A DNA stretch of 54,541 bases, filler included, from Bipalium vagum (Eukaryota), in NCBI GenBank assembly GCA_037834085.1. It is 2 parts of 2 records of this genome, joined end to end, with 100 filler letters (N's around TTAATTAATTAA, not from the genome) between each part and the next. Parts side by side here need not be neighbours in the genome. Positions count along the whole stretch, not along the records: positions 1 to 24,456 come from JBBMKC010201052.1; 1 more part is not named here. One strand, written 5' to 3'. The position numbers and the translations under genes were made by a program. The notes beneath the pieces are model-generated. The model did no database searches and was not told the origin of the DNA. It saw nothing but the letters and a program-made list of their open reading frames with translations. Every line of letters starts with the position of its first letter. The stretch's first letter is position 1. Below, in pieces: positions 167 to 21,676 of the stretch.

Positions 167-658
167 GTGAATGCAGTAAGGAGTGACAGAGATGCTTTTA
201 AAAGGAAGGTAACACAAAACCATGACACCAGAATACCATCATTTAAAGGAAGACAAATAGCAAGAGAAAATATTAAATTTTATGGATGTAATAAGGAGGG
301 TCATTTAAGTCGTAATTGTACGGCAAGAAGACAAATAGAATGCTGGACCTGTTCGAGTCAGGATCACATTAGCAGGGATTGTCCAAAAAAGAAATCTCAA
401 GTATGCTTCGGATGTCAGACAGATGGTCATATTAGGAGAAATTATCCAAATATAACCTGTAGGCGGTGCAACAGGAACGGGCATAGTGAAAGGGAATGTT
501 ATACCAACCTTCACGATGGTAGGAGTTTTCAAGCACAGAGGACCAGAGGTCCAGAGAAAGTTTATAGAAGGGATAATTTAAATGCTTTAGAAGAGGAAGT
601 TGACGGTGATAGACTGGTCGAATACGAAGTCAGTACCCGAAAGACAGGGCTCCGCTAG
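167..658 (+). pseudogene. gag: Gag C-terminal nucleocapsid region with four CX2CX4HX4C-type zinc knuckles
   Basis: FYGCNKEGHLSRNC, CWTCSSQDHISRDC, CFGCQTDGHIRRNY, CRRCNRNGHSEREC. The first and third have each lost one Cys. Confidence 0.85.
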
Positions 659-879
659 TTTGGGAGTTAGTAGGAGCCTTATATTTAACGTCGTCAGCGA
701 TGATTCCCAAAGGGGCACCCGGTGCAAAGAAGAAGAGTGGGCAAAAGTGTGGAAATTCATGAAGAATGACTTTAGTGATGTGGAGAATGATAAAGATGTG
801 GGAGCTGTGATTGAAGGAGGAGATTTCTTTATAACAGACAAAGTTATGAACGAAGACCAAGTATAACGGTAGAGATTCA

Positions 880-3110
880 AGGATAAAGATTCGAATGCTT
901 ATTAGATACGGGAGCTGGGGTCAGTGTGATGAGTAGGAATATTTTGAATAAGTTTAAAGACGTGGAAGTAGTGAGAAGTAATGGCAGATTAATGTGTGCG
1001 AATAATAGCCAATTGAAAATAGTAGGAAAATGCTCAATTTCGGTAAGAGTAGCAAATGAGTCAAAACTGGTGAACTTTACAGTAGTAGAGGAAGTCACAC
1101 CGGATTTAATCAGCGGAATAAATCTTCAGAAGGTATTCGGATTTAGGTTGGTTAAAGAGAATGCTGGGCAGATCAAAACTGATGGAAAGAAAAGAGAAGA
1201 ATCATATATGTGTAATATTGAAGGGACGTTTGGTAATAGAGTTAAGGAAGGGGAGCGTTTTAAGAGAGCAGTAGAGCTAACAGGAGTGACAAGCAACAAT
1301 CGGCTGGTGCAGATAATAAAAGAGAACGAGGGTGTTTTTATGGCCAACAAATGGGATGTCGGCTGCACTCACCTAGCGAAACATTATATCCGGACAACAG
1401 AAGAACCGATTAATCTTAAGCCGTTTAGACAGCCAATGAACCTAGAGGAGAAGATACAAGATACAGTCAAGAACCTATACGACAATGGAATTATTAAGAA
1501 ATGCAATTCACCTTGGAATACACCGTTCATTTGCGTATTGAAGAAGAAGAAAGATATCCGCATATGTTTAGATTTTCGTCAGTTAAATGCAGTGACAGAA
1601 AGGCAGGCATTTCCGATGCCAAATGTTGATGAAATGTTGGATGCCTTGGGTGGGGCAAAGTATTTTAGCTCTATTGATTTAGGTAATGCTTATTATCAAG
1701 TGGAATTAAAGGAGGCATCAAAGATCAAGACGGCTTTTTCTACCAAGGAAGGAAAATATTGTTTTAATAGGATGCCCTTTGGAATAGCGGCAGCTCCAGG
1801 CACATTTCAGGAGAAGGTCGTCGGTGTTATAAAAGGAGCAATGGTCTATCTGGACGACATATTAGTTTTTACGGGGACTGAAAGTTGGTATTATAAGGTT
1901 CTGAACGAAGTACTGAGAAGAGTGCGCGAAGCTGGACTAAGGATAAATCCAGAAAAGTGTCATTTACTGAAAGAGGAAATAGAGTTCTTGAGTCATGTGG
2001 TGAGTAAAAAGGGGATAAAGACAGACCCTTCAAAGTTGGAGGCGAATTAAAATTTCGAAAGGTCAAAATGTTTAAAAAGATTGAAAAGTTTTTTAGGGAT
2101 CTGTAACTATTATAGAAGATTTATAAAAGAATACTCGAAAAGATCTAGGCTCTTGGAGAAAGCGTGTGGAAAGAGTGAGAAAAAAGTAATATGGACACAT
2201 GAGATGGAAGAAGCGTTCAAGGAGATGAAAAAGGCATTAACATCAAGAACCGTATTGTGTTTCCCCGATATTAAGAAGGAATTTAATCTAGACACAGATG
2301 CGAGTTTTGCTTCGATACGAGCAATTTTGTCTCAACTGGACGAAAATGGAAAGGAACGAGCGGTACCATATGGCTCTCATGCCATGAGCACCCATTAAAT
2401 TGGCTACTGTGTTACTCGAAAGGAATTGCTGTAAATTAATTTTTTTTGTAATCACTTTCAACATTATTTATATGGAAGGAGATTCAGACTGAGCACGGAT
2501 CATAAAGCAATCACCTTCATGATGAGTACGAAGAAGCCGATCACGTCGCAATTCCAAACGTGGATTAATTATTTGAACAGTCTGGACATTTGTTTGGTAG
2601 TCCCAAGACTATCAATGTGGATTGCACAAAAACATTTGAGTCAAAGAAGATGACAGAGTTCGCGAAAAGTATAAATTCGGAACTGCGGTTCTCAAGTCCA
2701 TACCACCATAACACTAATGACCAGATTGAACGACAATTTAGAACTATTATGGAGAGACTGAATGCAGCTAGAGCGGAGCAAGGAAGGAAGGATTGGGAAG
2801 AACTATTGTCAGAGGTCGAGCTCTCATTGAATGCAACAACGCAGAAGACGACAGGGAGGAGCCCCACAGAAATTATTTTTGGCAGACGCATTGACCGAGA
2901 AAGATGGTATCCATCGAGAGAGAAGGTGGATGGAACGGAAGTGGAATCGATGACGAAAAGTAATTTTGAAGTTGGTGACAAAGTCCTGGTCAAAGTGGAA
3001 ACGAGGAACTAAGGTCCATATCGAATCCAAAGAAAAATACATGGAAGACGGTATTTGATAGAACACGCAGATGGAAGAATTCTGGAGAGGAACGTTGAGA
3101 AGTTAAAAAA
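880..3110 (+). pseudogene. pol: Disrupted pol (protease, RT, RNase H, truncated integrase)
   Basis: Motifs as above, split over several frames. The RNase H end (WINYLNSLDI, ~2561-2590) is fused directly to mid-integrase. Confidence 0.93.
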
Positions 3111-6650: not shown

Positions 6651-8744
6651 CAATATTATTAAAATGATAAATTAAAACAATTGTATGAGCTACGACCTTT
6701 CAATCAAATTTCAACCGAAAATTTTGTTTGGTCATTTTAGCACGACTAATTATAAAATTTTAATTTATTTAAAAAATAAAACTTTTTTTCAAATTATGAT
6801 GTAACAAACTTTTAAATCCCTCTAAAAAAGACTAATGAAATAGTTTTTAAAATATAGTCTAACAAATCATTTAAAATCAAAAAATAATTTTAAAATATTA
6901 AATAATCAATATGAAATACCTGAAATATTTAAATATCAATTTTTTATGGAGAATTTATCAAACAAACAGCTTTATTATCACATTTAAGATCTAAATAAGA
7001 TAAAGATGCAAAGATATGATTTGCTTAATGGATTAAAAAATAATAAGTAAAATTTAAATTAATGAAAAAATAATATTTTCATATTATTATTTTGTAATAG
7101 ACTTAAAATTTAATTTTTAAAATTTGACAGAATATGAAAATTTAACACGATATCCTCTCTGAAAATCGTTGCACAATTTAAAAAGAAATATTCACATTGA
7201 AGATATTCCATAAAGATTCCAAAAGTTCAGCCAAAAAACGAATTATTCAAGATATATTTCACTTAAGAGCTGTAATGCTACCTGATTTACATTTATAATT
7301 TACGTTCATTAAGATGATACATAAATCTCTAAAGCCAAGTAAAGATCCAAAGTAGCGGATTCATCTTTTGTTTCGTTTATGTTATGAGGCTTCTTTTGTC
7401 ATAATAAAATAGTTTTTGTGTCGTCTTAAAGAACTTTAAAATAACTTTACTTTTAATTTGAGCGAACATTGTTTTTTTCACATACAGATTTTGTGGAGAC
7501 AAATTTAGACTGCGATTGCCGATTATAAAAGTAAACCCTGACATGACCTGTTAATAGTTGAAAGATGAAAGAGATCAATCTGATCGTTTGAAGCTTTTAA
7601 GCATTTACAACAATATCTTTAATTAAAGAACATTAGCACAAATAACATTTATTGATAATCAATGAGATCTAAGAACAGCTAAGGAGTCTACATGGTTTTT
7701 TTTTGAGTGATAATTCGAGTTTGGTAAGTTATGGTGAAGGTAGCAAACTGTATTTTAGTTGCTTCCGCTGATGGTTATTTTGGATGAAGCCATAACTTCA
7801 GTGACCCTCAAATAAGCCAAAAAATATTTTGCTTTTTACTGGTGAGGCTCTTTTACAATTGCTGATATGTTGCATGATGGGTATCAACTAATTTTTTGGA
7901 AAATGTTTTAATTAGGAATAATATTATAAGATTTTAAACCCTAACCCTAACCTTAAAATAACACTAATCCGAACCAGATTGACCATTAATTTAATTTTCA
8001 TTTTTATTGCCTCTATTTATTGGCGAACCAATCAAAAAACAGGTGTTTCTATACCATAGCCTCATCTACAATTAATAAATAAAATTTTTTGTTAATATCA
8101 TCTACGTAAATTATTTCTTATCGTATTTCTTTCATAATATTATAAAATATGTATTTTGAATTGATTAAATTAATTAACTAAAACAAATTGGTATCCATGG
8201 TAACGAAATAAAAATTTTCAAAATAACCAAATTAATAACAATGAATGTCAAACGAGTTTTCCGAATCGTTAATTACCAAACATAACTTAGATGAACATTA
8301 CTTTCGTGGTAAGATAAATTTTATTTATGAAATAACATTCACAATTAACATTGGAGATCATAAATGTGCTAAAATGACAAAATTAAACCGTTCCTACTTA
8401 CAAGTATTCTCTCTCAAAAAGTTGGAAAAAGAAAAAAAAAGAAATTGGAAAAAAAAACTGTCAAAGAAAACTATCACCAAGCCAATCTATTTGCTGTCAT
8501 TCTTTTAATGAGCTTATGATCTTAGATATCGAAACGTAGAACTTCAAGTGTTCCAAATTTTTTATAAAAAATGATCCATATAAAGAAGTCCATATGCAAA
8601 TTCTTTTTTCAAAATTCTATTATAAATATTGATTATGAATGGACCTCTGAAACTCCTATTGAAAGGGTAGCTCAAGAATATAAGGTTCCACCGTCCACCA
8701 AATGCACTTGATAAGTCAAATGAAAAAATTTTTCCTCATTATTC

Positions 8745-8910
8745 TACACGAAGGAAAGCAACGAAAAAATTGGTGGTACTAAAGTTATTGTAGAAATTGA
8801 TGAATCCGTCATAGTTCGCAACAAATATGGAAGGGGAAGATCATTGCAAGGTCAACAAGGGACTGTTAAGAGTATTGAACAGCATAATCAAAAACGATTC
8901 TTTATTCAAC
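8745..8910 (+). mobile_element. Merlin (IS1595/ISXO2-like) transposase fragment
   Basis: KIGGTKVIVEIDESVIVRNKYGRGR matches the VEIDES...KYxRGR signature. Confidence 0.8.
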
Positions 8911-9109
8911 ATAAATATAATACATAATGTAACTGAACGATAAATTGTGTTCTTTTCCTAAAAATATCTTTTATTTCTACTTTAATGTAAAAGTTAATGT
9001 GACCAAACTACTTAAACAAATGATATTCTAAGTTGGAATACATCCGTTACAAATTTAATAATATAATTATCAACTAAACATTAATACTAATTATAATTAA
9101 TTTGGAGCA

Positions 9110-9265
9110 AAAGGTTGTCAAATGTTCAGTTTTAGTAATGGCACTTTGGAGTGATGGGTGTTTTATGGTCTACAGGTGTGTTTTCTCGTAAAAACCAACC
9201 TGTTGACCCCTCCACAACGTGATGCATATCACGTAAAGATATGTCAGCGTTTGAATGTCTTTCTT
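9110..9265 (-). pseudogene. 3' fragment (B') of a paralog of the gene at 19870-20788
   Basis: Reads DIQTLTYLYVICITL(frameshift)GSTGWFLREN...PITPKCHY* against DVQTLANLFGICITLRQGSTDWFIREN...SITPKCRY* in B. Both share TACTAAAACTGA across the stop. Confidence 0.85.
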
Positions 9266-10110
9266 CTTGTATCCGTCTCTTTTCTAAATAAACGGGTCTT
9301 TGACCTCTTTTTCTATTTCTCTTCTTTGATAATAACATCGGGAAATGACAGCTTGTCACCTTTCCTATCTCCGTTGTGAATTTGATATTTTCTCGAAGAA
9401 TTTCCATGAATGTAAGACAGCATCGATGTCTTTTTTACTCTCCAATATTAAGAAGACGTTCTCAACATATCTTTCCTAGCCCAGTGACTTACTTCCTTGA
9501 TGTTTTCCAAATTTCATTTCCAAGTAATCCATGAATACTGATGACTGTGTTGGTCCCAGTTAAGATATATATAACATTTACACAAGATAAAATGTAACAG
9601 TTTAAGACCCAGGCATCTCACTTGTGACATATCTTTGACGCTCCTTCAAAAAAACCGACAAGAACGTAATTTTATCCTCCATAGTCAAAAGAGGGTGGTC
9701 TCTTATTCTGCAGAGAAATAAATAAAGATGGCCGTCTCTCAAGATTGCAGGGATCTGAGTAAAGTGAATAAATAATTTATGGAAGTCTGATTCATTAATA
9801 AGTTGAGAAGGGAAACCATAAAAAATTTCCATAAAGATTTGGATCTAACAGACTCAAATATGGTTCTGATTGATGGGCAGTTGGTTTGATGGGTAAATAT
9901 TTCTTAGCTTCAGCTCCTTTTTAAGGATACTGAATGCCATCATAAGCATTTCAACTACCAAAGTGACGATGCAATATTTCCATTAAAACCTCTGCCTCTA
10001 ATTTCTGAATCAGCCAAAATGATGACATTCAAAGAGACCTTGTACTATTTTAGTTCAGTTGTCCGTGAGATCTACATGGTGCTTCTTAAAATATCAATAG
10101 TGATCCTTTA
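9266..10110 (-). mobile_element. Penelope-like retroelement RT remnant
   Basis: Minus-strand LGPTQSSVFMDYLE, KRYVENVF (decayed RYVDD) and ENIKFTTE...KLSFPDV (IKFTxE...LPFLD type). Confidence 0.65.
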
Positions 10111-10257
10111 AGCAAAGGAATAATACAAGTTCTAAATAATAATAATAACAATGAAAACAGTCTTATTAAGAATCAAATATTAAGGACAAAACTTGACGTT
10201 TAAAAAGTAATTTTCTCCTGCTAATGTCTCACAGGGTCCAGCGTTCATTCATCCACT

Positions 10258-11116
10258 TTAGGTTTTTATGTCGTCACATTCTCCTTCTGCTAAGTCAATG
10301 TTGACAGACGTTTTCGATGATGTTATACTAATTCCAAAGAGATTTGCCAAATTTCGAGTTCCGGACTGTCCTCCTTTGACATTAAACCCTCCATGCAATA
10401 CGAAATGCCAGTCGTTTCTTTCCACATGTCTCTGAAGATCTCCAAAATTTAAAGAAAACTCACCTTTAATCTTAAAAACTTTATTTTTCTCGCCATCGTG
10501 CGACTTAAATTCAGTAACGATATACATACAGTCATTTGTGTTCTTGCAAGCTCCGTTTGTCAGTATTTCAACAAAAATGTCCATCAAATTCTTCTTAGGC
10601 TCCGGTAAAGAGACAGCAATCATTCTACTCTTTCGGTACGAACCGAAAAGAAGTATACTCACATTGATTTTGTTTTTCAAAATTACAGTTGCTTTCACTG
10701 CGTCTGCAACACTAAACACTGTTGACATTGCAGAACTTTTCAAGCTGGGAACAGTTTTCAGCACTTTACAGCGTATGACATCAACATCAGAAGGTGACTG
10801 GAAAAAAAGGATTTAAAAGCGTAATGTGTAAAGAAGTTCTTACAACTTTGACGGGTCTCCTTCTGACAAAAATCTTTTCAGTGACACACAAAAACTTAGA
10901 TTGATCACTCTCCTGAGATGGATAAAACAGTCACAAAGACTTGTTCTCATCAAATCGGAATGCTTTGCAATCGGCCAAGTCGCATTTGAGAGAACACTCA
11001 ACTGCAGAACGAAGTGTCAGATTGAGGACGGGCTTGGCGACACAGGATTGAATGGCTCCGAAAGTATTGTTCGCCTCAACATTGATCACGGAAACGAAAA
11101 TTAACGTGAGAAACAT
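10258..11116 (-). pseudogene. Secreted PAN/apple-like domain protein, copy A' (exons 11116-10844 and 10797-10258), with an in-frame TGA at 10931-10933
   Basis: Signal peptide MFLTLIFVSVINVEA, then SAVECSLKCDLADCKAFRF. 46-bp phase-0 GT-AG intron. Exon 2 is fully open. The TGA aligns with TGC (Cys) in copy A. Confidence 0.75.
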
Positions 11117-11283
11117 TTGAAAAGTGTTTCCAAACTATAAATGACTTTCATATTTATCAGTGAAATTAGTCGTGCTAAACTTTCATTGGTCCACAAGATT
11201 GGATAGCGAAAATAATGTGTGCATCCATTCGGGTTGGAAGAGACACGTGGAATAGTCTCAGCATCAGACAAGGCTACCAGAAA
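10766..11283. repeat. Left arm of ~0.5 kb inverted repeat (partner 15106-15622)
   Basis: Near-identical reverse complement covering promoter, exon 1, intron and the first codons of exon 2. Confidence 0.95.
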
Positions 11284-11325
11284 TAAAGATTAATGTGAAA
11301 AGAATAATATATGACAAAATATGAA

Positions 11326-11362
<37 letters not shown>
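11326..11362. repeat. (AAT)n microsatellite
   Basis: Direct tandem repeat. Confidence 0.9.
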
Positions 11363-11364
<2 letters not shown>

Positions 11365-11499
11365 CTGAGAATTATCAGTTTTTTAATATTAACAATTCCC
11401 AGAAGCCACTTTCAAAAGACGAAAAGAGAAATAATTTATGATGCATTTTTATGTGATAAACCAATTGATCTTTGAGCAACAGATCATAAAAAAGATATT

Positions 11500-12480
11500 T
11501 GCAAAAATATAATTTTAATTTTTTTTGAAGTGGTCCCTTTTGGTTTGATTCACAGTTTCAAGCGTTTCTTGAAATTCTCAGCTATGGGAAGTATCATTTC
11601 CGGCTATATAGTGTACAATTCTTGGCATAAGTATTGTTTCAGTGACTAAGCTGTTGTGACGTTTACTACAGACTCTAGCTTCCAAAATTAACCATACTCT
11701 ATACTCCATTGAATTGAGATCCGGTGAGTACGGCGATCTTTTTTGAAACGTGATAAATTCCGAAAAATTGGCTTTGCATAACTCTTCCAAAGTGTTTACT
11801 TTGTGGGGCGGATCTCAGATGTTTATTGATGATTGCCGAAGTGTTTTTGAGATCAGAGAAGTGCTTCGACATCAAGGATCAGGCGTGTGTATATTTCTTG
11901 ATTGATTTTGACGCCTTCATCAATGAAGTTGATTTTGCTGATTGCACAGATTTCACCCCATACCACAAGGGAAAGCGGGTTTTGACAGCCTGCTCAACGG
12001 TGAATTTCCCCTCGTCTGTGAAGAGTATTTGTTCCTATTTGCTTTTGGAGCTCCAGTTTATGACATCCATTAATTCTTAGGAACTTATTTCTCTCCGTGA
12101 AGAAACTGAACTATTTAGATCTTGTAAGACTTGTACTGAATCTCATTTTTAGCAATTAGTCGAGCTGATTGACGCTTAAGTTCTGTTTTACGAGCTGTCT
12201 TCCGCATTGAAGTCTTTGAATTACGTTGAAGAAACTTATAGATGATTTTTCAATTTGGATTAGTTCGATTTTAACTGTTCTCGTTCTGCCACTTTCTGGA
12301 CGTTTTCCAATTTTTCCAAGATTTTCACATCGTTTTATCGATCCCCTAACGTTAGGAAAAGCAATTGTGAGTGTTTTAGCAATATCAATATTGCGAAATC
12401 TTTGTTCGTGCAAGACAACAATATTTTCTTGGTGAGCGCTCATTGATAACGGGTGATCGTTTTAATGTGAAAACTATTTA
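11500..12480 (-). mobile_element. Degenerate Tc1/maT-like transposon, near full length
   Basis: N-terminal HTH MSAHQENIVVLHEQ...SGRTRTV (12156-12443) and C-terminal SPYSPDLNSMEYRVWLILE (11578-11790). Confidence 0.85.
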
Positions 12481-12681
12481 CACATTCATCATCCATTTAA
12501 TAAACACATTTCAAATTTTACCTAGAAAAAAACTAAAATCAACGTATTAAAACTAAATAAAATTATTTATCACTTTGTCTTGTGATAATAATAATAAAAA
12601 TATTATTAATATTAATTAGTACTTCAAAGCATCCAAAGTTTTATAATAACAAATCTATTTAAAGAAAAAGTTGTGGAGCCT

Positions 12682-12893
12682 ATTTATTGTTTTTGCTTAA
12701 AGAGAAAATTGGATTCGAGAAGGAACCCGGGGCCTTTGTCTTTTACACTAACGACAATAAATGCTTTGCAAAACGCTGAGGCTCTGTTTCCCATTGCTTT
12801 CAAGCAAAATAAAGCATTGTTTCTCTAAATGAGAGTGTGAGACAAAACTTTTTCAAAGGTTTCCTTGGTTCTATTGAACAGTTTTCTGTCACT
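12682..12893 (+). repeat. ~200 bp direct repeat (partner 14322-14517)
   Basis: Both copies share TTTGCTTAAAGAGAAAATT...GAGGCTCTGTTTCC...CTATTGAACAGTT. Confidence 0.85.
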
Positions 12894-13459
12894 GTAATAT
12901 CGATCTGCTGAAATGATGTCATAGAAAGGGAAGTTGAAAGAAACATTAGACCCCAAAGAGACCTAATTATAACACTGGAAATTGGAAAAAGGAGAACAGA
13001 GAGAGCATTCAAAATAAAAACTTTCATTTAGAAAGTTAAAAGTCAAAGCAGAATGAAACATGAACGATACGAGTGAGAATAAACAAGACCAGCACTCACC
13101 TCTACGTTTAAATCTAAAAAGTGTTGTTCATCTTTTATAATGTAAAAATATTATATAAAAATATGTAAAGTTTTCAAAATAAAATTAAATTTAAACAGAA
13201 ATTCCATTTCAAAATCACCATGGCAACCAGAAATGACCAATGGCGTATTGTGCATTTTTACATATTTGTTTAAATAATATTTATCACGTCAAAAGATAAG
13301 CACAATTTCAAATATTGATTCGATTCTAAATAGTTCAAGTTGCAGGGAATTCCATTTGAAGTAATCCTCAGACGATATCAGATCTTTACGAGAAATGTCG
13401 AAAGTGAGCAAATTAAGTGGTCATTTATCGAAATGTGCACAGTTACCAAGGTAGGGCAA

Positions 13460-13760
13460 AATTCTCTATTGTGCTCATTTTCAGTAACTCGCTTTCTGGT
13501 GAAAGGCTTCTTTTGGTAATACACCATTTAATGACCATGGAACACTTTCAAATGAAAGAACGAAGATTATCAAAAAAGGAGGCTCAACAATGTAAAAATT
13601 AGGTAAATGCTGTCGCTCATGAGTCGAAATTCGCTCAGGGTTTATGTCAGACTTTTATTGCAGCAGACTCTCCATTGTTCAGATAACGGAATTAGGCCTA
13701 CAACCATTTTGAAAAAATATACAGAATTCCTTCGGGAACGACACTGCGATCGGAGTAAGT
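13460..13760 (+). mobile_element. hAT/CGGBP1-like transposase fragment (inverted partner ~14600-14830)
   Basis: FAQGLCQTFIAADSPLFR resembles the hAT LCxAFVAADIPL motif. 13519-13687 is the reverse complement of 14602-14770. Confidence 0.6.
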
Positions 13761-15105
13761 AGGAAATTTTCAATCTGCTATCGATGACTGTTGCAAAAGA
13801 GCTTAGAAGACTGATGACAAAATCTCGGGGAAGAAAAACCGACTGATGATGCCAAAGACAAATTTAAATGAAGTGCAAATGTCAAACATTTCGACGGAGA
13901 TGGTCAAAGAGTGTTTTATGAAATAGTGTTGCTATTTTTAATCTAGGGACGATGAGTGACATTAGACACGCTGCAAAAAATATTTTTCGTGGATATCGTT
14001 AGGTGAACGATCATTAACATTTTGCTGATAAATTGACAATATTTAGTTTCAATGAGCCATTTTCAAAAAGTGGTGAGAAATAATTTGTGATGAACTTCGT
14101 CCTACAGAGGTTATCCATCTGCTGCAGAAATATTATTATTATCATTTTATATAAATAAATACAGTTTCATGATGACGTGTTCCCTGACTTTATAAATAGA
14201 AAGCAGGAAAGCTCTAACTTCATAAAACAGTATTTAGAGCAATAATAATAATAATAATCTTTTGTACACTATTCAAAGCTTCTTTATAATAAACTGATTA
14301 GGAGGAAAACACTTGGTAGTGTTTATTGTTTTGCTTAAAGAGAAAATTAGATTCGAAAGGGAACCCAGGGCTTTTGTCTCTCACACTAAGGGTAATATTT
14401 GCTTTGCAAAGCGTTGAGGCTCTGTTTCCTATTACTTTCAGGCAAAATAAAACATTATTTCTCCAAGGGAGAGCGTGAAGCAAAACTTTTTCAAAAATTA
14501 CCTTCTATTGAACAGTTCCAAGATCAATATTTCCAATATGCTCCGATCTCAGTGACGTATATTCTGTATATTTCTTCAAAATGGTTGTAGACCATCATTG
14601 TGTTATCTGAAAAATGGAGAGTCTGCTGCCATAAATGTCTCACATAAGCCCTGAGCGAATTTCGACTGTTTAGCGACAGCATTTACCGAATTTATACATT
14701 GTTAAACTTCTTTTTTTGATAATCTTCGTTCTTTCATTTGTAAGTGTTCCATGGACCTTAAATGGTGTATTTTTATAAAGGATCCTTTATAAAAATCGAT
14801 TTATTGCAAATCAGTACAATAGAGAATTGCAGAGGATTGCAGATCATTTTAAGGACGGAAAACAATCATCACTATCACAGTAAAAGTTGTTTTCAGTCTC
14901 CCATCCTCTGACATTGCAGCCGAAAAGGATATTCGTGATATACTCAGAAGATTAAAAATTTTCTCTTAGCAAGGTGAGATTTTACGGTGATCAAGGGTGT
15001 TTCTCTCCCATGGGTTTCAGAAACCTTTTCATGTTTTCCATTAGAAACACAAATATTCATCTTTCTCGTTCAATTTTTTCCACCTTTAAATCTCCTCGAA
15101 CTTCC

Positions 15106-15270
15106 TTTCTGGCAGCCTTGGCTGATGCTGAGACCAGTCCACGTGTCTCTTCCATCCTAACTGGACACACATTATTTTCGCTATCCAATCTCGTGAACCA
15201 ATGAAAGTTTAGCACGACTAATTTCACTGATAAATATGAAAGTCATTTATAGTTTGGAAACACTTTTCAA
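15106..15270 (+). promoter_or_regulatory. Putative promoter/5' UTR of gene A, duplicated upstream of A'
   Basis: CACGTG at ~15140, two CCAAT boxes (~15185, ~15198) and GATAAATA at ~15229. Conserved in the inverted copy. Confidence 0.45.
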
Positions 15271-16129
15271 ATGTTTCTCACGTTAATTTTCGTTTCCGTG
15301 ATCAATGTTGAGGCGAACAATACTTTCGGAGCCATTCAATCCTGTGTCGCCAAGCCCGTCCTCAATCTGACACTTCGTTCTGCAGTTGAGTGTGCTCTCA
15401 AATGCGACTTGACCGATTGCAAAGCTTTCCGATTTGATCAGAACAAGTCTCTGTGCCGGTTTTATCCATCTCAGGAGAGTGATCAATCTAAGCTTTTGTG
15501 TGTCACTGAAAAGGTTTTTGTCAGAAGGAAACCTGTCAAAGTTGTAAGACCGTCTTCATACATTATACTTTTAAATCCTTTATTTCTAGTTGCCTTTTGA
15601 TGTTGATGTCATACGCTGTAAACTGCAGAAAAATGATAAGGGCATAAAAAGTGATTTCAAGTCGACGGTGTATGATATTTCGGACGATATGAAAGCAGCT
15701 GTCATTGTGAAAGGTAAAGACAACGCGGTCCAAATTGTCCTAGGCACATATCAAAAGAGCAAGATGTTTGCAGTTTCCTTAATCAAATCTCATAAAAAGA
15801 TGTGGAATAATTTCGTTGAAATATTGACAGATGGAGCCTGCAAAATGTATACTAAATGTGCGCATGATGTATCTGAATATAAAACCCACGATACCAAGAA
15901 GAGCAAAGTGTTTCAGGTAGATGACAAGTCGTCTTTCGATTATGAAGATCTTCGACGTTTTGTGGAGAGAAACGACTGGCACTTCATATTGTACGGTGAA
16001 TTTAAACTTAAAGGACAGGAATCTCAAACTCAAAAATTGGCAAGTCTTTACGGAGTTCGTATAACGGCAACAAGGAAGACGACCAACATAGACTTCAATC
16101 CAAGTGACTGTAAGAATAATGAATCATAA
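15271..16129 (+). CDS. Secreted PAN/apple-like domain protein, copy A (exons 15271-15543 and 15590-16129; 270 aa)
   Basis: Hydrophobic signal peptide. ECALKCDLTDCKAFRF...LCRFY Cys pattern. The 46-bp GTAAG...TTCTAG intron joins the two ORFs in phase 0. Confidence 0.85.
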
Positions 16130-16799
16130 ATAGCTGATGAAAGTCATATGGACGCTGTGAGACATTGGTAATGGACTCTCTTGATCTCTAAATGTGTTAG
16201 TTGTTGTCTTAATATTTGATTATCAATAAATACTTCAGTCAAAACAGTCCTTTAAAAGTTTTACTTTCACTGATTTTGAAGAATGAAGAGTTTCCTTCAA
16301 ATTATGACATTATAAAAGTAAACCCAAATATTTCTATTTTGAATATTATGCACTCAAAATATATGTTAATTGGATTTTAGACAGAGATAAGTAAAAATTT
16401 ATGGTTCTTGGTGAAAAATTATGAAAAAATTACTCAGGGTCTTGAATGTCGCAGTAGTCTGATGTGTAGTCGGGTATCCATTCGAAGATTTACCTCTACC
16501 TCTTATGTTTTACATATATTTTGTGTGCTTTTATTAGAGGATCTAACTACCGATAGTGCCAGGTGTATTAATACTCGTCGACATCATTTTACAGGCACCG
16601 AACGTATTTCATAGTGCTCAAGTAATTTAATTAATATTACGTTTTCATTATAAGCTGTTTATGTGACAAATGGCATTCTGAATGGCACTGACCAAGCCTT
16701 CTTTAACATGTGACAATTACAAAATCCAGACACAAAACGAAACCAAAATTCTCTTTCCTTTTATAATATTTATATTTCAAAAATGTATTTTCAAGCATT

Positions 16800-17650
16800 A
16801 AAGACAATGTCTTTTTAAATTAAAAAGGAGTACGCGTGTCCAAGTTTCTTCAAAGAATTTTCAATATTTCTCCAAAGCTGATCAATTTTTTTGACATAAC
16901 AGCCTTTATCGTAAACACGACGTTTTAATACCGACCAAAATTCCTGGATCGGTCGATCAAAGCACGTTCGCTTGATTGCAATGTTTTGGCGCAAAATTGA
17001 TGTTTTTAGACTTCAGGACATCTTGCGTCTCTTTCGAGTTATAAAAAGTAAGATCTGGTGAAAACACAATTTCATTGTTTTTGTGATGCTAAGTAATATA
17101 ATTTTTGAATTTACTCATGCATTTTGTGATATCGAATTTTGTATTGATTTCCTGACCTGATGGAACAATGTCACAACGGACCTTTCCGGAGAAGACTATC
17201 CGTACCAGTAATTTTGACTTAAATTTCCAAATTCTCTTTAGTTTTATTTTGCTGGGCGTTTTTTCGATATTTGATGTATAACATCTAGAATTAGCAGCGA
17301 GATCGTTGTTTGACAAACGAAAATATGACAAATATATGATAAAAAGTGAACCAACTGGCAATATTTTGGAAGAACTACAGTTTGTTGAGTTATTGTGCTA
17401 TTTGGAACCATTTTTCTTTTCAATTATCCAATATCCGTCTTTCCTTTGGATATTTGACATTTATACTGTTGGGTAACATTACATTTTGAAGTCAGTTTTC
17501 TTTGTGAAATACCATGAGCATGATCTATCATTTTCTTCTTTGAGTACCTTTAGAATGTGCCCCTAAAGATGCTGGAAGGGAACATTTCTTCACAGAAATA
17601 TAAATATTAGGTTTTCCAAGCAAGCCAAATACCGTGTTGGGCGCTCTTAG
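16800..17650 (-). mobile_element. Tc1/maT-like transposon remnant
   Basis: Minus-strand VPSGQEINTK and FWSVLKRRVYDKG. Confidence 0.7.
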
Positions 17651-17759
17651 AATGTCATAAAACGTCGAATTTAACTTGTTTCTCTAAGCACTTTGGATAT
17701 ATTCCATAAGAAACAAATGGTAAGAAGAATTGTGATGAAACAGTTTCAAAATTGATTGC

Positions 17760-18660
17760 AAAACTGAATCATTTTTATTTCCTTCTCTTTTACAATAATA
17801 ATAAATAATAATATTATGGCTCCATGTCAGGTGAGTAAGTCGCTGATGTGTGATGCTGATTATTAATTCCAGCACCATTAAATGGTGTACTTTTCTCAAT
17901 CGCCTTTTTTACATGACTCTTTTGAATTTGTACGTCTCTCTTGTGATTATTTCTCATGGTTTTATGAACTCGTAGTTCATTACTTCTAGGTAGTACCGAA
18001 TGTACAGTAAAAAGTTGGTTCAGTGGATATTGCGCTTCATAATCGACGAAGATGGTTGACCTGGATAGACTCAAGATTTCCCTCGATTAATGTTTTCGCA
18101 ATAGATGAGTTTCTCATCCCCTGTAACAATCTTGAGCATTATATTTTTCTAAAATCTTGTTTGGAGAGATAGCGAAGATTCATATCATCTATTCTTGTTC
18201 CCAGGAGAAAGGTTATATGGAAGCCACGTGTAAGCTTTCATAGTCGAGAAAAAAATTGCTTGTTTAAGAACTCCAAGCTGCATTGCAATTTCTGCTTGCG
18301 TCTGTCATGGGTCTTTATCTTGCAAAATTCTCAAGGTCTTCATCTACAATGAGTTTTGATAGACCTGGCTGTTCTGCATCGTTGAGGTCTAGATTTCCAT
18401 TTCTGAAATGTCCAATTTTTTGACTACACCTTCACCCAAAGCGGAAATAATCACATTTGTGGTTTGATAAACCGCTTTCTTCAATTGGAAGGCAAATAGT
18501 AATTTGATTTATCGCTATTTATATGGAATATTAAAACAACAAATTTTTTATATGATTAAATTATTACCTTTAATAATTACCCCTAACTTAATATTTATCT
18601 TTTTAGCAAAATAAGCGATTTAATAGTGACCCTGGATCCATTTACTAAATAGGACCTAAA
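17760..18660 (-). mobile_element. Mariner remnant, part of the left inverted arm around gene B
   Basis: IVTGDEK at ~18110-18130. Reverse-complement homology to 22021-22260. Confidence 0.8.
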
Positions 18661-19117
18661 TAAGGAGAAATCTTGATTTTCTTTTCAAACAGCATATTCG
18701 CTATTATAATAAATTCCGAATTTACTTCAATAATAAAAATATGCACCTAAAAAAATTTGCAACGACGGTACTTTATCCGAACTGTGCCCAATAATTATTC
18801 AGACGGTAGATCTCACGCAAAGAGCTCTCGTTCAGTAGTCTCACAGAATTGAGTGTCAGAGTTGAATGAGTATAAGGAATACAAATAAAATTTACTACAT
18901 AAGGCTTTTAGGTCTTTAATGATCAATTAGGAAAGCTCGAAGCTACATTGGAAAATGGAACACAAGGATTGATAAATGGATAGAATGTCAAAATCCGTCG
19001 CAATGCCGACCACATACTTCAAAAGTGACACTGCAGATATTAAAGATTTCGAATGTGACCTCCTTTCTCGTACTCCATACTCACTTTACATCGCCCCTTC
19101 AGATTATCACTTGTTTA
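18660..19117 (+). repeat. Inner left inverted arm with a mariner 3' fragment (partner 21222-21676)
   Basis: GTACTTTATCCGAACT...CTGCAGATATTAAAGATTTCGA...CCCTTCAGATTATC is mirrored at 21222-21542. Encodes a decayed PYSxxIAPSDYHL. Confidence 0.85.
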
Positions 19118-19399
19118 TGTTGTGAAAATTTGGAAATTATCAAATAAATATTTTTATGAAAAGTTTTCTTTTTTCACCTTTTTAAATATTTTATTTATAG
19201 AATTGTCACGTTTCGTCTCCAATAAATTTATTTATTTATATTTATATTTATTTTAAGGTATTAATATATATTTATTTTTTAATATTTTTACTTATATATA
19301 TATTATTCATTTTATATCTTTTATTTAATTATGTTATACTTATTTATAATTTTTTCTCTACCCATAAATTTATTGATTTGTTTTGTAAAAGGAATAGCT

Positions 19400-19680
19400 T
19401 GCGAGTAACATGAGAGCTGTGGATAGTTTACATGGTGAAGTCGATGTTGTTTCCAATTTCTACTCTTATAAACATTATATAACAATACCCTGGGCACCCC
19501 TCTGCTTCGTCATTTCAACAATAGACCGTAGAACATTTTGTAATGTCACTCATCACAGAACGACGATGAGGAATACAGGCGTTTTGCATGTTATGCTTAA
19601 AGAGTCATGGGATTTCCAAAAGAAATTGTTCGAGAAATATTTGCAACTTGGATGAGTCTTTCGTGTTCAGAAAATATATT
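19400..19680 (+). mobile_element. Possible piggyBac-like fragment
   Basis: Weak VVSNFYS (DNFY-like) and GFPKEI motifs only. Confidence 0.3.
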
Positions 19681-19869
19681 TCATCGATTACTTTTTACGA
19701 AACATCTCTGGGAAACAGGACTCCACTTGTTTATTTATATCTAAGCCAACGAAAGCATGCTGAGACTCCTTTCTATATAATTCTGTCTAATTGTGAAACC
19801 TGGAGAGTTTCTTTACTTCTCATAAATAACGACACGGCGTAATTACTTTTTATTATTATAAATCGCTCA

Positions 19870-20788
19870 ATGAACATTTTTCCTTTTCTACTGGCACTTT
19901 TAATTGTCAGTATCAAAGGCGACAGCTTCTACCTGGCAGTTCCATCCTGTGTGTACAAGGCGCAGGCCAACATCACCGTGATCTCTGCAATCAAGTGTGC
20001 AATCCAATGTGATCTGACTGAGTGCAAGGCTTTCCTATTCGATCCGGAGACCTCAAAATGTGTCCTGTACGAATTTCTCGAAATGTGCCAGTCAAACACG
20101 AATTGTGTCAATGCAACCGTATTTGTCAACAATCGATATAATGGGAAGGTGAGCGTGTTTTGATGATAACGATCATTGGTATTATTTTTTATAGTTTCAT
20201 TCTGCTGATTCCAATCCTCGATTCAAAATCTTGAAGGACATCAACGTAAGGTTAACCAGCGGCAATCCTTCGATTTTTGAGATTATAAATGGAGATCGGG
20301 CTAGTCCAATATTAACGGACAGAAAGAATAATATTATTATCGTGGAGGGATCTTATCAAAGTACGAGAATAATGATTTTCCCAAAGTGGGAATATGTCCG
20401 AAATTTCAACATCAGAAACGATACCTATGCCGTTTTGGCCAACAATGCAGTGCGATATTTGACCGGGGGAATGTGCAAGGATTATTTGCAATGTTATCAC
20501 TCAATTTTGAACTACACAAGATACGTTGAAGAGAATAATCTTGTCTTTGGTATTCTTGGAGCGGATCCAATAGACATGGATATCATGATGGAGAAAATGA
20601 GAACTCAAAATTGGCATTTTATAATTTCAGGCACTTTTGTTGGGGTCGGGGTGAAGAGGGACGTTCAAACGCTGGCAAATCTGTTCGGGATATGCATAAC
20701 TTTGAGGCAGGGATCAACCGATTGGTTTATACGAGAAAACATTTGTGTTAATGTCACCAAGTCTATCACTCCAAAATGTCGCTACTAA
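19870..20788 (+). CDS. Secreted PAN/apple-like domain protein, copy B (exons 19870-20148 and 20195-20788; 290 aa)
   Basis: Signal peptide MNIFPFLLALLIVSIKG, then SAIKCAIQCDLTECKAFLF...KCVLY. 46-bp phase-0 GTGAG...ATAG intron. Exon 2 shares G(S/T)Y, LTxGxCK, WHF and LAxL(F/Y)G with A and A'. Confidence 0.87.
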
Positions 20789-21189
20789 AACTGATCCTTT
20801 GAACAGACTTAATGTTGTTCTCATAATAATAGTAATAATGATAATAATAATAATTATTATTATTATTGCTTAACTGATAATAAAAATCATTTCTTTTCCC
20901 TTACATTTTTCTGTTTCGTTTTGTATTTTAATTATCTTTTCATTCTTAATCTAAAACCTCTTAAGCGAAGTTTGCATTGGTCTGTGAAGTTCAAATGAAA
21001 ATCAATACAATCTTTTAAAAATCGATTTTGGACAAAGGGAAAATGATAATTTAAACAAAGTAATTTCCGTAATTGTCTATGACCTTTTGTCATTTTAAAG
21101 GTAAATTTATTGTCTCATCTTCATAAAAAGCAGAGGGCTCTGGTGTAGAGAAAGTATCAGGGTCAGCTTTAATTGTGTCCCGTGTTGAA

Positions 21190-21676
21190 AATTATCCACC
21201 TTTCAGATAATTCTGAAGAGATTTAAGCAAGGGATAATCTGAAGAGGGCGTGTACAGTGAGTATGGAGCACGAGAAAGAAGATCACACTCGAAATCTTTA
21301 ATATCTGCAGGGTCACTTTTGAGGTATGGGGTGGGCATTGGGACGGATATTTGGATTTTGCAATTTAGCTTCGAGCATTCACAATTGATCACAAAAGACC
21401 TAAATACCGTATGTAGTAAATTTTAGGTATATCCCTTATTCTCGTTCACTCTGATCCTCAACTCTGTAGGACTACTGAACTAGAGCTCTTTGTGTGAGAT
21501 CTTACATCTTAAGAAGTCTTGAGTATAGTTCGGATAAAGTACTTTAGGCAGATACTTAAATTATTGAGGTAAATTCGTAATTTATTTGAATTTGCCTAAG
21601 AAAATGATCTTAAAACGAAGAAAAGGTGAATTATGGAGAATAGGCGGTTGGAAAAGAAATTCAAGATCTGTCCTTA
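21190..21676 (-). repeat. Inner right inverted arm with a mariner 3' fragment
   Basis: Reverse complement of 18660-19117. ORF 21192-21392 reads APYSLYTPSSDYPLLKSLQNYLKG. Confidence 0.85.

What the first reader, a model, noticed from the sequence alone, without database searches (positions are those of the whole stretch)
9110..20788. Mirror-image cluster of an uncharacterised secreted PAN-domain gene family (B'<-A'<- | ->A ->B)
Seen: four homologous units, namely the B' fragment (9110-9265, -), A' (11116-10258, -), A (15271-16129, +) and B (19870-20788, +). A, A' and B each encode a signal peptide, a PAN/apple-like Cys domain and a ~180-200 aa second domain with shared G(S/T)Y, LTxGxCK, WHF and LAxL(F/Y)G blocks. 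The ORF track splits them, so the family only appears after splicing. Known: PAN/apple domains mediate protein or glycan binding. Inference: an A-B pair was duplicated in inverted orientation, giving a lineage-specific secreted recognition, mucus or defence family. I cannot assign it to a named family. This is the best candidate for an undescribed system in the window.
Basis: partly seen in the sequence, partly recalled or inferred. Interest (0 to 1): 0.82.

Follow-up and report, generated by a model that had tools for sequence, protein, structure and literature searches.

The report
Expanded secreted PAN plus TCAF_N-like gene family
The window holds two intact genes, one pseudogene and one relic of a very large family of small secreted proteins in an AT-rich eukaryote; each joins a PAN/apple domain to a domain that looks like the glycopeptide-binding N-terminal domain of bacterial mucinases and vertebrate TCAF proteins, and the family grows by inverted and tandem duplication with partial gene conversion.

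Summary
A (15271-16129, +) and B (19870-20788, +) are intact two-exon genes. Each has a 46-nt phase-0 GT..AG intron.

- **A'** (11116-10258, -) has the same structure but carries an in-frame TGA at a conserved PAN cysteine codon.
- **B'** is a frameshifted relic of about 210 nt (9056-9266, -) of a B-type 3' end.
- **Exon 1** encodes a signal-peptide-like N-terminus plus a PAN domain.
- **Exon 2** is not an unknown domain. It folds (pLDDT 90) like IMPa residues 77-295 (Z 12.4) and like TCAF_N (PF27016) models (TM 0.70-0.74).

The published IMPa domain carries an O-glycopeptide exosite. These genes have no peptidase domain.

The family has at least 150 scored places per query, out of 572-664 first-look candidates, in the 440-Mb genome. 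Intron position and cysteines are conserved, and dN/dS is about 0.1-0.5.

A and A' are mosaic: 90-100% identical over promoter, exon 1 and intron (dS 0.04), but 60-72% in exon 2 (dS 0.94). In exon 2, A pairs with a copy on another contig, and so does A'.

Head-to-head pairs recur on other contigs. No RNA data were available. The likely function is extracellular, non-enzymatic glycoprotein binding; this is inferred, not shown.

The parts
9056..9266 (-). B' relic: the last ~45 codons plus 3' UTR of a B-type gene. It is frameshifted near 9205-9212 and truncated upstream of 9266.
   Evidence: blastn gives 219 nt at 71.7% identity to 20653-20865, E 1.5e-21. The only other matches are B's closest paralogues L032, L033 and L036. 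tblastn gives two overlapping HSPs in different frames.
10258..10797 (-). A' exon 2: open TCAF_N-like domain of 179 aa plus a TAA stop.
   Evidence: HMM score 223 bits. 47% aa identity to A exon 2. Sister to L015/C52256.
10798..10843 (-). A' intron, 46 nt, GTAAGA...CCAG, phase 0.
10844..11116 (-). A' exon 1: signal peptide plus PAN domain, with an in-frame TGA at 10931-10933 replacing the conserved Cys62 codon (TGC in A).
   Evidence: The Logan contigs of run X1 show no other letter at that place.
11117..11288 (-). A' upstream (promoter) part of the inverted-repeat arm.
   Evidence: 86-99% identical to 15102-15270 ([I1, I5], 31, 45).
11289..15101 (.). Spacer between the two arms, about 3.8 kb. 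It is unique sequence with internal repeats: D2 12691-12866 / 14329-14504 and I2 13518-13692 / 14597-14771. It also holds short transposase-like ORF remnants.
   Evidence: and the ORF list. The transposase reading comes from motifs only; Pfam gave no hit.
15102..15270 (+). A upstream (promoter) part of the arm, with CCAAT-like and TATA-like motifs.
15271..15543 (+). A exon 1: 91 aa, hydrophobic signal-peptide-like N-terminus, PAN domain with 6 Cys.
   Evidence: PF00024 at 23.7-24.5 bits against a cut-off of 21.4. AF2 pLDDT 75, and the top folds are all PAN modules. Hydropathy.
15544..15589 (+). A intron, 46 nt, GTAAGA...TCTAG, phase 0.
   Evidence: The same intron position is found in about 30 paralogues.
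15590..16129 (+). A exon 2: TCAF_N / IMPa_N_2-like domain, 179 aa, plus TAA. AATAAA lies about 100 nt downstream.
   Evidence: AF2 pLDDT 90.3. IMPa 5kdv_A residues 77-295, Z 12.4. Foldseek E 7e-5. Atlas TM 0.70-0.74 to PF27016 clusters.
16130..19869 (.). A-B intergenic region, 3.7 kb. It contains dispersed-repeat and transposase-like debris.
   Evidence: ORF list. The 18920-19120 stretch has at least 40 scored copies genome-wide.
19870..20148 (+). B exon 1: 93 aa, signal peptide plus PAN domain with 7 Cys.
   Evidence: PF00024 at 19.8 bits, just below the cut-off. HMM of family exon 1 gives 119.6 bits.
20149..20194 (+). B intron, 46 nt, GTGAGC...TATAG, phase 0.
20195..20788 (+). B exon 2: TCAF_N-like domain, 197 aa with 5 Cys, plus TAA.
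18708..19117 (+). Left arm of a second, smaller inverted repeat that brackets gene B.
   Evidence: It matches 21224-21586 (-) at 74% over about 410 nt, 290 bits. That is better than any other genomic copy (next best 155 bits) ([I3, I4, I7], 74).
21224..21586 (-). Right arm of the inverted repeat that brackets gene B.

Best explanation
The region is one cluster of a very large, rapidly turning-over eukaryotic gene family.

Gene product. Each gene has two exons split by a ~46-nt phase-0 intron. It encodes a small (270-290 aa), cysteine-rich soluble protein. Exon 1 gives a cleavable signal peptide and a PAN/apple domain. Exon 2 gives a three-layer alpha/beta domain of the TCAF_N / IMPa_N_2 type. 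This domain type sits N-terminal to M60-like or M88 mucin-type O-glycoproteases and in vertebrate TCAF proteins. Here there is no peptidase domain.

State of the four units. A and B are intact. A' is inactivated by a nonsense codon. B' is a decayed 3' relic.

History (inferred). An A-B pair was duplicated in inverted orientation long ago; exon-2 dS between A and A' is about 0.9. B' then decayed. Both arms seeded further copies elsewhere (C117883 from A, C52256 from A'). The inner parts of the arms (promoter, exon 1, intron and the first ~35 nt of exon 2) were recently homogenised by gene conversion or recombination (dS 0.04).

Function (inferred). The proteins are secreted, non-enzymatic binders of extracellular glycoproteins or glycans, with two binding modules. 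PAN is a known protein/carbohydrate-binding fold. The second domain is homologous to one that holds an O-glycopeptide exosite in IMPa. They may act in mucus or matrix organisation, or in recognition or defence. The size, clustering, pseudogene content and moderate dN/dS of the family fit a birth-and-death repertoire.

What is shown: gene structure, domain folds, family size, mosaic identity, purifying selection.
What is inferred: secretion, ligand class, biological role, order of events.
For: Gene models and conserved intron:
- GT..AG introns of 35-87 nt (mostly 40-51) lie at the same phase-0 position between the two domains in about 30 paralogues.

PAN domain:
- PF00024 is over the cut-off for A, and 18 of 25 paralogues match.
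- The PDB profile hits HGF N domain and plasminogen.
- The fold hits are all PAN modules.
- Cys25/41/45/50/62 are invariant.

Second domain:
- AF2 model with pLDDT 90.3 and pTM 0.88.
- IMPa residues 77-295, Z 12.4, with the next hit at Z 3.7; Foldseek E 7e-5 to IMPa only.
- TM 0.70-0.74 to five different PF27016/PF18650 clusters.
- 4 of 28 paralogues weakly hit PF18650.
- The profile hits fish TCAF-like repeat proteins at summed E 1.3e-15; hhalign gives 88.6%.
- The IMPa PF18650 domain binds a glycopeptide at an exosite (PMC9915616).

Secretion:
- All 25 exon-1 sequences start with a strongly hydrophobic stretch.
- Exon 2 has no TM-like segment in nearly all members and ends in a hydrophilic tail.
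- Total Cys counts are even (A 6+4, B 7+5), and N-glycosylation sequons are conserved.

Family size and selection:
- 150 places scored of 572 candidates with A, and 150 of 664 with B, all at E<1e-14.
- dN/dS is 0.11-0.69 in 13 close pairs.

Mosaic identity and phylogeny.

B' lineage.

Recurrent head-to-head pairs:
- C170006: arms 94% in the 5' part against 82% in exon 2; dS 0.14 against 0.37.
- C263916: an old pair.
- Both.
Against: - No transcript evidence. The only public run holding the sequence is a DNA run kept as contigs, so splicing and expression are inferred from conservation only.
- The signal peptide was judged by hydropathy, not by a trained predictor.
- The sequence link to TCAF is weak per repeat (15-19 bits, only profile positions ~4-80) and is significant only when summed.
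- PF18650 is below its cut-off, and PF27016 is missing from the local Pfam copy, so formal family membership is untested.
- The ligand-binding inference rests on one exosite in a bacterial homologue at ~11% identity. Conservation of that site here was not examined.
- The joined two-domain proteins were not searched or folded, so inter-domain packing is unknown.
- The inverted arrangement rests on a single assembly. The Logan contigs break inside the shared 5' tract and do not bridge the arms.
Confidence: 0.65

Rival explanations
1. The exon-2 domain is an enzyme rather than a binding module. It would be a class-I-glutamine-amidotransferase-like or ThuA-like hydrolase using the invariant Cys84 and the WHF histidine, and the family would be a secreted hydrolase repertoire.
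For: - The fold class is alpha/beta/alpha.
- A fish TCAF-like relative also hits LBP_M and DUF7408, which are GATase-like families.
- Cys84 is invariant, and His131 is present in most members.
Against: - No conserved Cys-His-Glu triad. The invariant columns are only G52, C84, C90, W130 and G155.
- His131 is replaced by N, Q or R in several intact paralogues.
- Cys84 always comes with Cys90 five residues on, in a cysteine-rich protein that looks secreted, which fits a disulfide.
- In the model, Cys84 lies in a loop after a helix, not in a strand-turn-helix nucleophile elbow.
- No enzyme other than IMPa scores above Z 3.7.
Confidence: 0.1
2. The copies are passengers or relics spread by transposable elements. 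Most would be non-functional repeats, and the mirror cluster would be TE debris rather than a host gene cluster.
For: - Hundreds of places in the genome.
- The window is rich in TE remnants: an LTR retroelement at 1-3100, and dispersed repeats and an inverted repeat bracketing B.
- Two of the four local units are dead.
- Pseudogenes occur elsewhere too: L002, L013, L015.
Against: - Copies are deeply diverged (30-55% aa), yet most keep open frames, the intron position, all core cysteines and the signal peptide.
- dN/dS is well below 1 in both exons for nearly all close pairs.
- No shared flanking termini exist beyond the immediate promoter and 3' UTR.
- Relatives with the same structure exist in another species.
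Confidence: 0.07
3. The mirror arrangement, or the mosaic identity, is an assembly artefact: a chimeric contig, or collapse or mis-join within the near-identical 5' tracts.
For: - The assembly is very fragmented: 272,664 contigs with a mean length of about 1.6 kb.
- The 5' tract exists in at least three near-identical copies (A, A', L015).
- The independent k-mer contigs break exactly there and do not bridge the arms.
Against: - The arms are not identical (79% overall), and a 3.8-kb unique spacer separates them, unlike fold-back artefacts.
- Both exon-2 versions and the spacer are present with 0 differences in the run's contigs. One 1,674-nt contig runs from the spacer into A's arm (13553-15226).
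- The same head-to-head layout with a more similar 5' part occurs on another contig, C170006.
Confidence: 0.08
4. The proteins act like vertebrate TCAF1/2, as intracellular partners that regulate a TRP-type ion channel.
For: The exon-2 fold matches TCAF_N models, and the profile matches fish proteins annotated as TCAF-like.
Against: - The hydrophobic signal-peptide-like N-terminus, the PAN domain, 10-12 cysteines and the N-glycosylation sequons all point to the secretory pathway.
- The M60-like part of TCAFs is absent.
- A family of hundreds of members is not expected for a channel chaperone.
Confidence: 0.03

Closest known systems
IMPa (PA0572) N-terminal domain, Pfam PF18650 IMPa_N_2; PDB 5KDV/5KDX/7JTV
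   Same: Best and only strong structural match. 171 of 179 residues of A exon 2 superpose on IMPa 77-295 (Z 12.4, rmsd 3.4; Foldseek E 7e-5). 4 of 28 paralogues give weak PF18650 hits. This IMPa domain is non-catalytic and binds an O-glycopeptide at an exosite (PMC9915616).
   Different: About 11% identity. PF18650 scores are below its cut-off. IMPa is a ~900-aa bacterial metalloprotease with helical and catalytic domains, whereas these genes stop right after the domain and carry a PAN domain in front. Conservation of the exosite was not tested.
TCAF_N (Pfam PF27016) of vertebrate TRPM8 channel-associated factors TCAF1/TCAF2 and of bacterial/archaeal M60-like peptidases
   Same: TM 0.70-0.74 to five ESM-Atlas clusters in which 89-100% of members carry PF27016. 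One is a stand-alone 211-aa 'TCAF2-like' chordate cluster. The family profile hits polypterid fish TCAF-like proteins (summed E 1.3e-15).
   Different: No M60-like_N or Peptidase_M60 domain. A signal peptide and a PAN domain are present instead. Each fish repeat matches only the first ~80 profile positions at 15-19 bits. PF27016 itself could not be run because it is not in the local Pfam copy.
PAN/apple-domain binding proteins (HGF N domain, plasminogen PAp, factor XI/prekallikrein apple domains, apicomplexan microneme lectins such as Sarcocystis SML-2 and Toxoplasma MIC4)
   Same: Exon 1 matches PF00024 and folds as a PAN module with the core cysteines. Like the microneme lectins, these are small secreted proteins in which PAN is a binding module.
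   Different: There is a single PAN module rather than arrays, and it is fused to a TCAF_N-like domain. I found no named protein with this pairing. The only full-length relative outside the metagenome contigs is an unnamed UniParc entry (P0019).
Palindromic or inverted multigene clusters kept similar by arm-to-arm gene conversion (general phenomenon, from established knowledge of palindromes in sex chromosomes and multigene families)
   Same: Head-to-head arms in which the inner part (promoter plus exon 1) is near-identical while the outer part is old. The pattern is repeated on C170006.
   Different: The arms are short (about 1.1 kb) and the conversion tract is only about 0.5 kb. One arm is already a pseudogene, so conversion is not preserving function here.

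Membership tests
PAN/apple domain (Pfam PF00024 PAN_1) | Match to the family HMM at or above the gathering score (21.4 bits) | tested here: met
   A exon 1 scores 23.7-24.5 bits. B scores 19.8 bits, just below. A' scores 13.5 bits because it is cut by the stop. 18 of 25 paralogue exon-1 sequences match at E<=0.01.
PAN/apple domain (Pfam PF00024 PAN_1) | Conserved core cysteines forming the hairpin-loop disulfides | tested here: met
   C25, C41, C45, C50 and C62 are invariant, and C77 is present in at least 90% of 25 paralogues. The disulfide connectivity itself was not tested.
PAN/apple domain (Pfam PF00024 PAN_1) | PAN fold (helix packed on an antiparallel sheet) | tested here: met
   AF2 pLDDT 75. 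All top Foldseek hits are PAN modules (HGF N, plasminogen, SML-2, Eimeria PAN, FXI), with probability 1.00, E about 0.009 and TM about 0.5. The PDB profile hits HGF at E 6e-4.
TCAF_N (PF27016) / IMPa_N_2 (PF18650) domain | Match to the PF27016 HMM at its gathering score | not testable with these tools
   The local Pfam-A copy does not report PF27016 even for fish TCAF-like P0025. The family is known here only through the ESM-Atlas annotation.
TCAF_N (PF27016) / IMPa_N_2 (PF18650) domain | Match to the PF18650 HMM at its gathering score (25 bits) | tested here: not met
   Only 4 of 28 paralogues match, with best E 0.0015. A, A' and B give no hit.
TCAF_N (PF27016) / IMPa_N_2 (PF18650) domain | Same three-dimensional fold over the whole domain | tested here: met
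   Z 12.4 over 171 residues to IMPa 77-295, with the next hit at Z 3.7. Foldseek E 7e-5. TM 0.70-0.74 to PF27016/PF18650 clusters.
TCAF_N (PF27016) / IMPa_N_2 (PF18650) domain | Significant sequence-profile similarity to annotated members | tested here: inconclusive
   Whole-protein E is 1.3e-15 to P0025 in a 1.84e9-protein library, but it is built from four repeats of 15-19 bits each covering profile positions ~4-80. hhalign probability is 88.6%, E 2.6e-6.
TCAF1/TCAF2 and M60-like / M88 O-glycoproteases (whole proteins) | Peptidase_M60 (or M88) catalytic domain with an HEXXH zinc site in the same polypeptide | tested here: not met
   No peptidase hit in any exon. A and B end with TAA directly after the domain, followed by AATAAA. 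The genome's own M60-like ORFs (~740 aa) show no similarity to the exon-2 profile.
Class I glutamine amidotransferase-like enzymes | Conserved catalytic Cys-His-Glu triad | tested here: not met
   The invariant columns are G52, C84, C90, W130 and G155 only. His131 is variable, and no invariant acidic partner exists.

The most novel reading that the evidence does not exclude
The family is a diversified extracellular recognition repertoire of several hundred secreted proteins. Each would pair a PAN module with a mucinase-type O-glycopeptide-binding (TCAF_N / IMPa exosite-like) module and no protease. The host would use them to bind or cross-link mucin-type glycoproteins, its own or those of microbes, prey or parasites. 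New specificities would arise by inverted or tandem duplication plus recombination that swaps the PAN-exon module and the TCAF_N-exon module between neighbouring paralogues. This would be the first functional context for the TCAF_N domain outside proteases and channel partners.
Probability: 0.25. Interest if true: 0.7.

Novelty: new variant of a known kind. Interest (0 to 1): 0.5.

Why it matters
TCAF_N / IMPa_N_2 is a recently defined domain. Its only experimental clue is a glycopeptide exosite in one bacterial mucinase, and its role in vertebrate TCAF proteins is unknown. This genome uses the domain on its own, without a protease, fused to a PAN module behind a signal peptide, and has multiplied that architecture to hundreds of copies under purifying selection. 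That provides:

- a natural panel of small, easily expressed two-domain proteins for testing what the domain binds;
- a candidate major secreted family (mucus, adhesion, defence) in an under-studied eukaryote;
- a clean example of family growth by inverted duplication with partial gene conversion.

It is not a new kind of system. Both domains and the mode of evolution are known kinds.

Tried and rejected
- Word-index protein search with A exon 2: no hit. With P0019: only itself.
- ESM-Atlas feature search with A exon 2: no usable hit. With P0019: only weak PAN clusters at 0.88-0.89, leads only.
- PDB sequence-profile search with the exon-2 alignment: nothing below E 1.
- Pfam on single exon-2 sequences: nothing credible (PH_2 at E 0.03, rejected).
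Laying it confirmed the letters but did not bridge the repeat.
- Origin from the genome's own M60-like peptidases: their N-terminal 300 aa show no similarity to the exon-2 profile (hhalign probability 0.05%).
- Code reassignment of TGA to Cys as an explanation of the A' stop: rejected. Other in-frame stops in paralogues (L013) fall at non-Cys columns and include TAG.
- Taxon: an Rfam SL1 search was empty, but the control was also empty, so it is uninformative. The ~46-nt introns with TTTCAG-like acceptors, 33% GC and relatives seen only in environmental metagenomes suggest a small invertebrate; this is not shown.
- Pfam on the short transposase-like ORFs around the genes: no hits, so calling them Tc1/mariner-like rests on motif recall only.
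- All searches were made exon by exon, by reference.

Full report
**1. What is there**

The window is AT-rich eukaryotic DNA (about 26-41% GC per kb, mostly about 33%). It comes from a 440-Mb assembly of 272,664 contigs, and the window is contig C201052.

Reading the sequence together with tblastn of the exons against 50 paralogous loci gives clean two-exon models:

| Gene | Exon 1 | Intron | Exon 2 | Product |
|---|---|---|---|---|
| A (+) | 15271-15543 | 15544-15589 (46 nt) | 15590-16129 | 270 aa |
| B (+) | 19870-20148 | 20149-20194 (46 nt) | 20195-20788 | 290 aa |
| A' (-) | 11116-10844 | 10843-10798 (46 nt) | 10797-10258 | broken |

- All three introns are GT..AG and phase 0, and sit exactly between the two domains.
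- The same intron position, with lengths of 35-87 nt (mostly 40-51), is found in about 30 paralogues on other contigs. In the absence of RNA data, this is the main support for the splicing.
- A' carries TGA where A and every paralogue have the Cys62 codon (10931-10933). The only public run that holds the region shows no other letter there.
- B' is a relic at 9056-9266 on the minus strand. It matches the last ~45 codons and the 3' UTR of B (219 nt, 72%, E 1.5e-21). It has a frameshift (two overlapping tblastn HSPs).
- An HMM scan of all six frames finds no other piece of B', and in particular no PAN exon.

Only A and B can be functional.

**2. The two domains**

*Exon 1.*
- It begins with a strongly hydrophobic stretch in all 25 paralogues examined.
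- It continues as a PAN/apple domain. PF00024 is above its cut-off for A, and 18 of 25 paralogues match.
- Five cysteines are invariant and a sixth nearly so.
- A PDB profile search hits the HGF N domain and plasminogen.
- An AlphaFold model (pLDDT 75) finds only PAN modules at the top of Foldseek.

*Exon 2.*
It gave nothing in Pfam for A, A' or B, and nothing in a PDB sequence search.
- With 28 paralogues as the alignment, it folds with pLDDT 90.3 and pTM 0.88.
- The model has one clear structural relative among 48,161 PDB representatives: residues 77-295 of the Pseudomonas O-glycoprotease IMPa (Z 12.4, 171 residues, next hit Z 3.7). Foldseek gives E 7e-5.
- In the ESM Atlas it matches, at TM 0.70-0.74, five clusters in which 89-100% of members carry PF27016 (TCAF_N) or PF18650 (IMPa_N_2). 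These include vertebrate TCAF homologues, bacterial and archaeal M60-like peptidases, and a stand-alone 211-aa chordate 'TCAF2-like' cluster.

*Sequence-level support is weaker but points the same way.*
- 4 of 28 paralogues hit PF18650 below its cut-off.
- An exhaustive profile search of 1.84 billion representatives returns a polypterid-fish TCAF-like protein at E 1.3e-15. That score is the sum of four tandem repeats of 15-19 bits, each matching only the first ~80 profile positions.
- hhalign gives 88.6% probability.
- PF27016 itself is not in the local Pfam copy.

I therefore call the domain TCAF_N / IMPa_N_2-like. The fold match is strong, and formal HMM membership is untested or not met. 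There is no peptidase domain: the genes end with TAA and a nearby AATAAA.

**3. Family size, selection and distribution**

- Each of A exon 2 and B exon 2 finds 150 scored places (the scoring cap) out of 572 and 664 first-look candidates in the genome. All are at E<1e-14, and most have open frames of 190-200 aa. These are lower bounds, and they may include uncollapsed haplotypes.
- Copies are 30-55% identical in protein, yet keep the signal peptide, cysteines, motifs and intron.
- In 13 close paralogue pairs, dN/dS is 0.11-0.69 for exon 2 and 0.21-0.54 for exon 1. This is purifying but fairly relaxed selection.
- Pseudogenes occur elsewhere too: L002, L013 and L015, besides A'.
- Outside this genome the profile finds only 37 other representatives. 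They are unnamed short contigs from ENA, JGI and Logan assemblies, plus one unnamed 291-aa UniParc protein with the full signal peptide-PAN-domain layout.
- One Logan contig is only ~70% identical in DNA to anything in this genome and has an in-frame 48-nt intron at the same place. The family therefore exists in at least one other species.

**4. The mirror arrangement**

The inverted repeat is solid (930 nt ungapped, 79%), but it is a mosaic.

| Stretch (A coordinates) | A vs A' identity | dS |
|---|---|---|
| ~15102-15625: ~170 nt of promoter, exon 1, intron, first ~35 nt of exon 2 | about 86-100% (99-100% over 15194-15391); exon 1 | 0.037 |
| ~15625 onward: rest of exon 2 and 3' flank | 60-72% | 0.94 |

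- In the exon-2 tree, A is sister to a copy on C117883 (83% aa, itself 5'-truncated with a TGA). A' is sister to a copy on C52256 (a frameshifted pseudogene).
- Forcing A and A' together is rejected (p-AU 8e-65). A clade of all four is not rejected (p 0.14).
- C52256 shares the near-identical 5' tract with both A and A'.
- B' matches only B and B's three closest paralogues. That is what an old inverted duplication of an A-B pair predicts.

The reading that fits all of this has four steps:
1. An old inverted duplication occurred.
2. B' decayed.
3. Each arm was copied elsewhere.
4. The inner 0.5 kb of the arms was recently homogenised by gene conversion. Equivalently, one copy had its 3' half replaced.

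The order of these events is inferred, not shown.

The layout is not unique:
- By coordinates, at least four other contigs hold head-to-head pairs, two hold tandem pairs and two hold convergent pairs.
- On C170006 the head-to-head arms are 93-94% identical over upstream sequence plus exon 1, but 82% over exon 2 (dS 0.14 against 0.37).
- On C263916 the pair is uniformly old.
- Inverted duplication with preferential homogenisation of the inner, 5' part therefore looks like a recurrent mode of growth in this family.

An assembly artefact is unlikely:
- The arms differ, and the spacer is 3.8 kb of unique sequence.
- Both exon-2 versions are present in the run's contigs.
- However, those contigs break in the shared tract and do not bridge it.

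**5. How it most likely works**

*Shown:* a small two-domain protein with a hydrophobic N-terminus, 10 cysteines in A (6+4) and 12 in B (7+5), conserved N-glycosylation sequons, no TM-like segment in nearly all members, and a hydrophilic C-terminus.

*Inferred:*
- It is secreted and disulfide-bonded. The odd-plus-odd cysteine count of B-type members suggests an inter-domain disulfide.
- PAN modules are binding modules for proteins or carbohydrates (established knowledge; HGF-heparin and microneme lectin structures are among the fold hits).
- The IMPa domain homologous to exon 2 is non-catalytic, and in one crystal structure it holds an O-glycopeptide at an exosite (PMC9915616).
- The family alignment has no conserved catalytic triad. 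The invariant Cys84 always comes with Cys90.

I therefore favour a non-enzymatic, two-module binder of extracellular glycoproteins or glycans (mucus or matrix organisation, or recognition or defence). My confidence in that functional statement is about 40-50%. My confidence in the structural and evolutionary description is about 85%.

Rivals (enzyme, TE passenger, assembly artefact, TCAF-like channel partner) are listed with their evidence in the Rival explanations section.

**6. Comparison with what is known, and novelty**

- Both domains are known kinds.
- The combination of signal peptide, PAN and TCAF_N-like domain without a protease has no named counterpart in anything I could search.
- Its expansion to hundreds of copies is notable.
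- The genome also has at least 19 M60-like peptidase ORFs of ~740 aa, but their N-terminal parts are unrelated to this domain.

I rate this a new variant of a known kind, of moderate interest. It is most useful as a handle on the unknown function of TCAF_N.

**7. Limits**

- No RNA data were available.
- No trained signal-peptide predictor was available.
- PF27016 was not available locally.
- The joined spliced proteins were not searched or folded. All work was exon by exon, by reference.
- The degenerate LTR retroelement at 1-3100 was only observed.

Noticed in passing
window 1-3100 (+): A degenerate Ty3/gypsy-type LTR retroelement coding region, split over several ORFs. The pieces are gag zinc knuckles (167-658), reverse transcriptase (926-2050), RNase H (2081-2398) and an integrase fragment (2590-3012). 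GC is higher (about 40%) with strong GC skew. It was observed only.
   Followed up: partly
window 18708-19117 (+) and 21224-21586 (-): Gene B is itself bracketed by an inverted repeat of about 360-410 nt (74-87% identity). Its arms are each other's best match in the genome. About 200 nt of each arm (18920-19120) belongs to a dispersed repeat with at least 40 scored copies. The short ORFs in it look mariner-like by motif, but Pfam gave no hit.
   Followed up: partly
window 11289-15101: The spacer between A' and A holds its own repeats: a direct pair at 12691-12866 / 14329-14504 (84%) and an inverted pair at 13518-13692 / 14597-14771 (89%). It also holds short Tc1-like ORF remnants at 11578-11790 and 12156-12443, identified by motif recall only.
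   Followed up: no
G000 contigs C250379, C21457, C234219 and 16 others (L055-L057): The genome has at least 19 M60-like peptidase genes. Several are uninterrupted ORFs of 727-758 aa (M60-like_N plus Peptidase_M60). Their N-terminal ~300 aa have no Pfam hit and no similarity to the exon-2 domain of this family.
   Followed up: partly
L059 (G000:C170006:3000-12999), arms 1162-2387 and 8377-9604: A second head-to-head pair of family members has a ~6-kb spacer. It shows the same pattern as A'/A: upstream sequence plus exon 1 is 93-94% identical, and exon 2 is 82% (dS 0.14 against 0.37).
   Followed up: yes
L012:1165-2022 (+) and P0002 (L051:165-1100): In some members the short intron is in frame and free of stops. 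Intron retention would therefore give a continuous 286-311 aa protein, and gene callers have predicted exactly that read-through product.
   Followed up: no
window 10130-10170, 11321-11370, 20808-20870: (AAT)n/(ATT)n microsatellites lie just outside the 3' ends of A' and B and just upstream of the A' arm.
   Followed up: no
P0025, P0039 (polypterid fish proteins, 916-937 aa): These proteins, annotated as 'TCAF homolog' or 'uncharacterized', consist of four tandem TCAF_N-like repeats about 200 aa apart. No M60 domain was detected by the local Pfam. They also hit LBP_M, DUF7408 and IMPa_N_2.
   Followed up: partly
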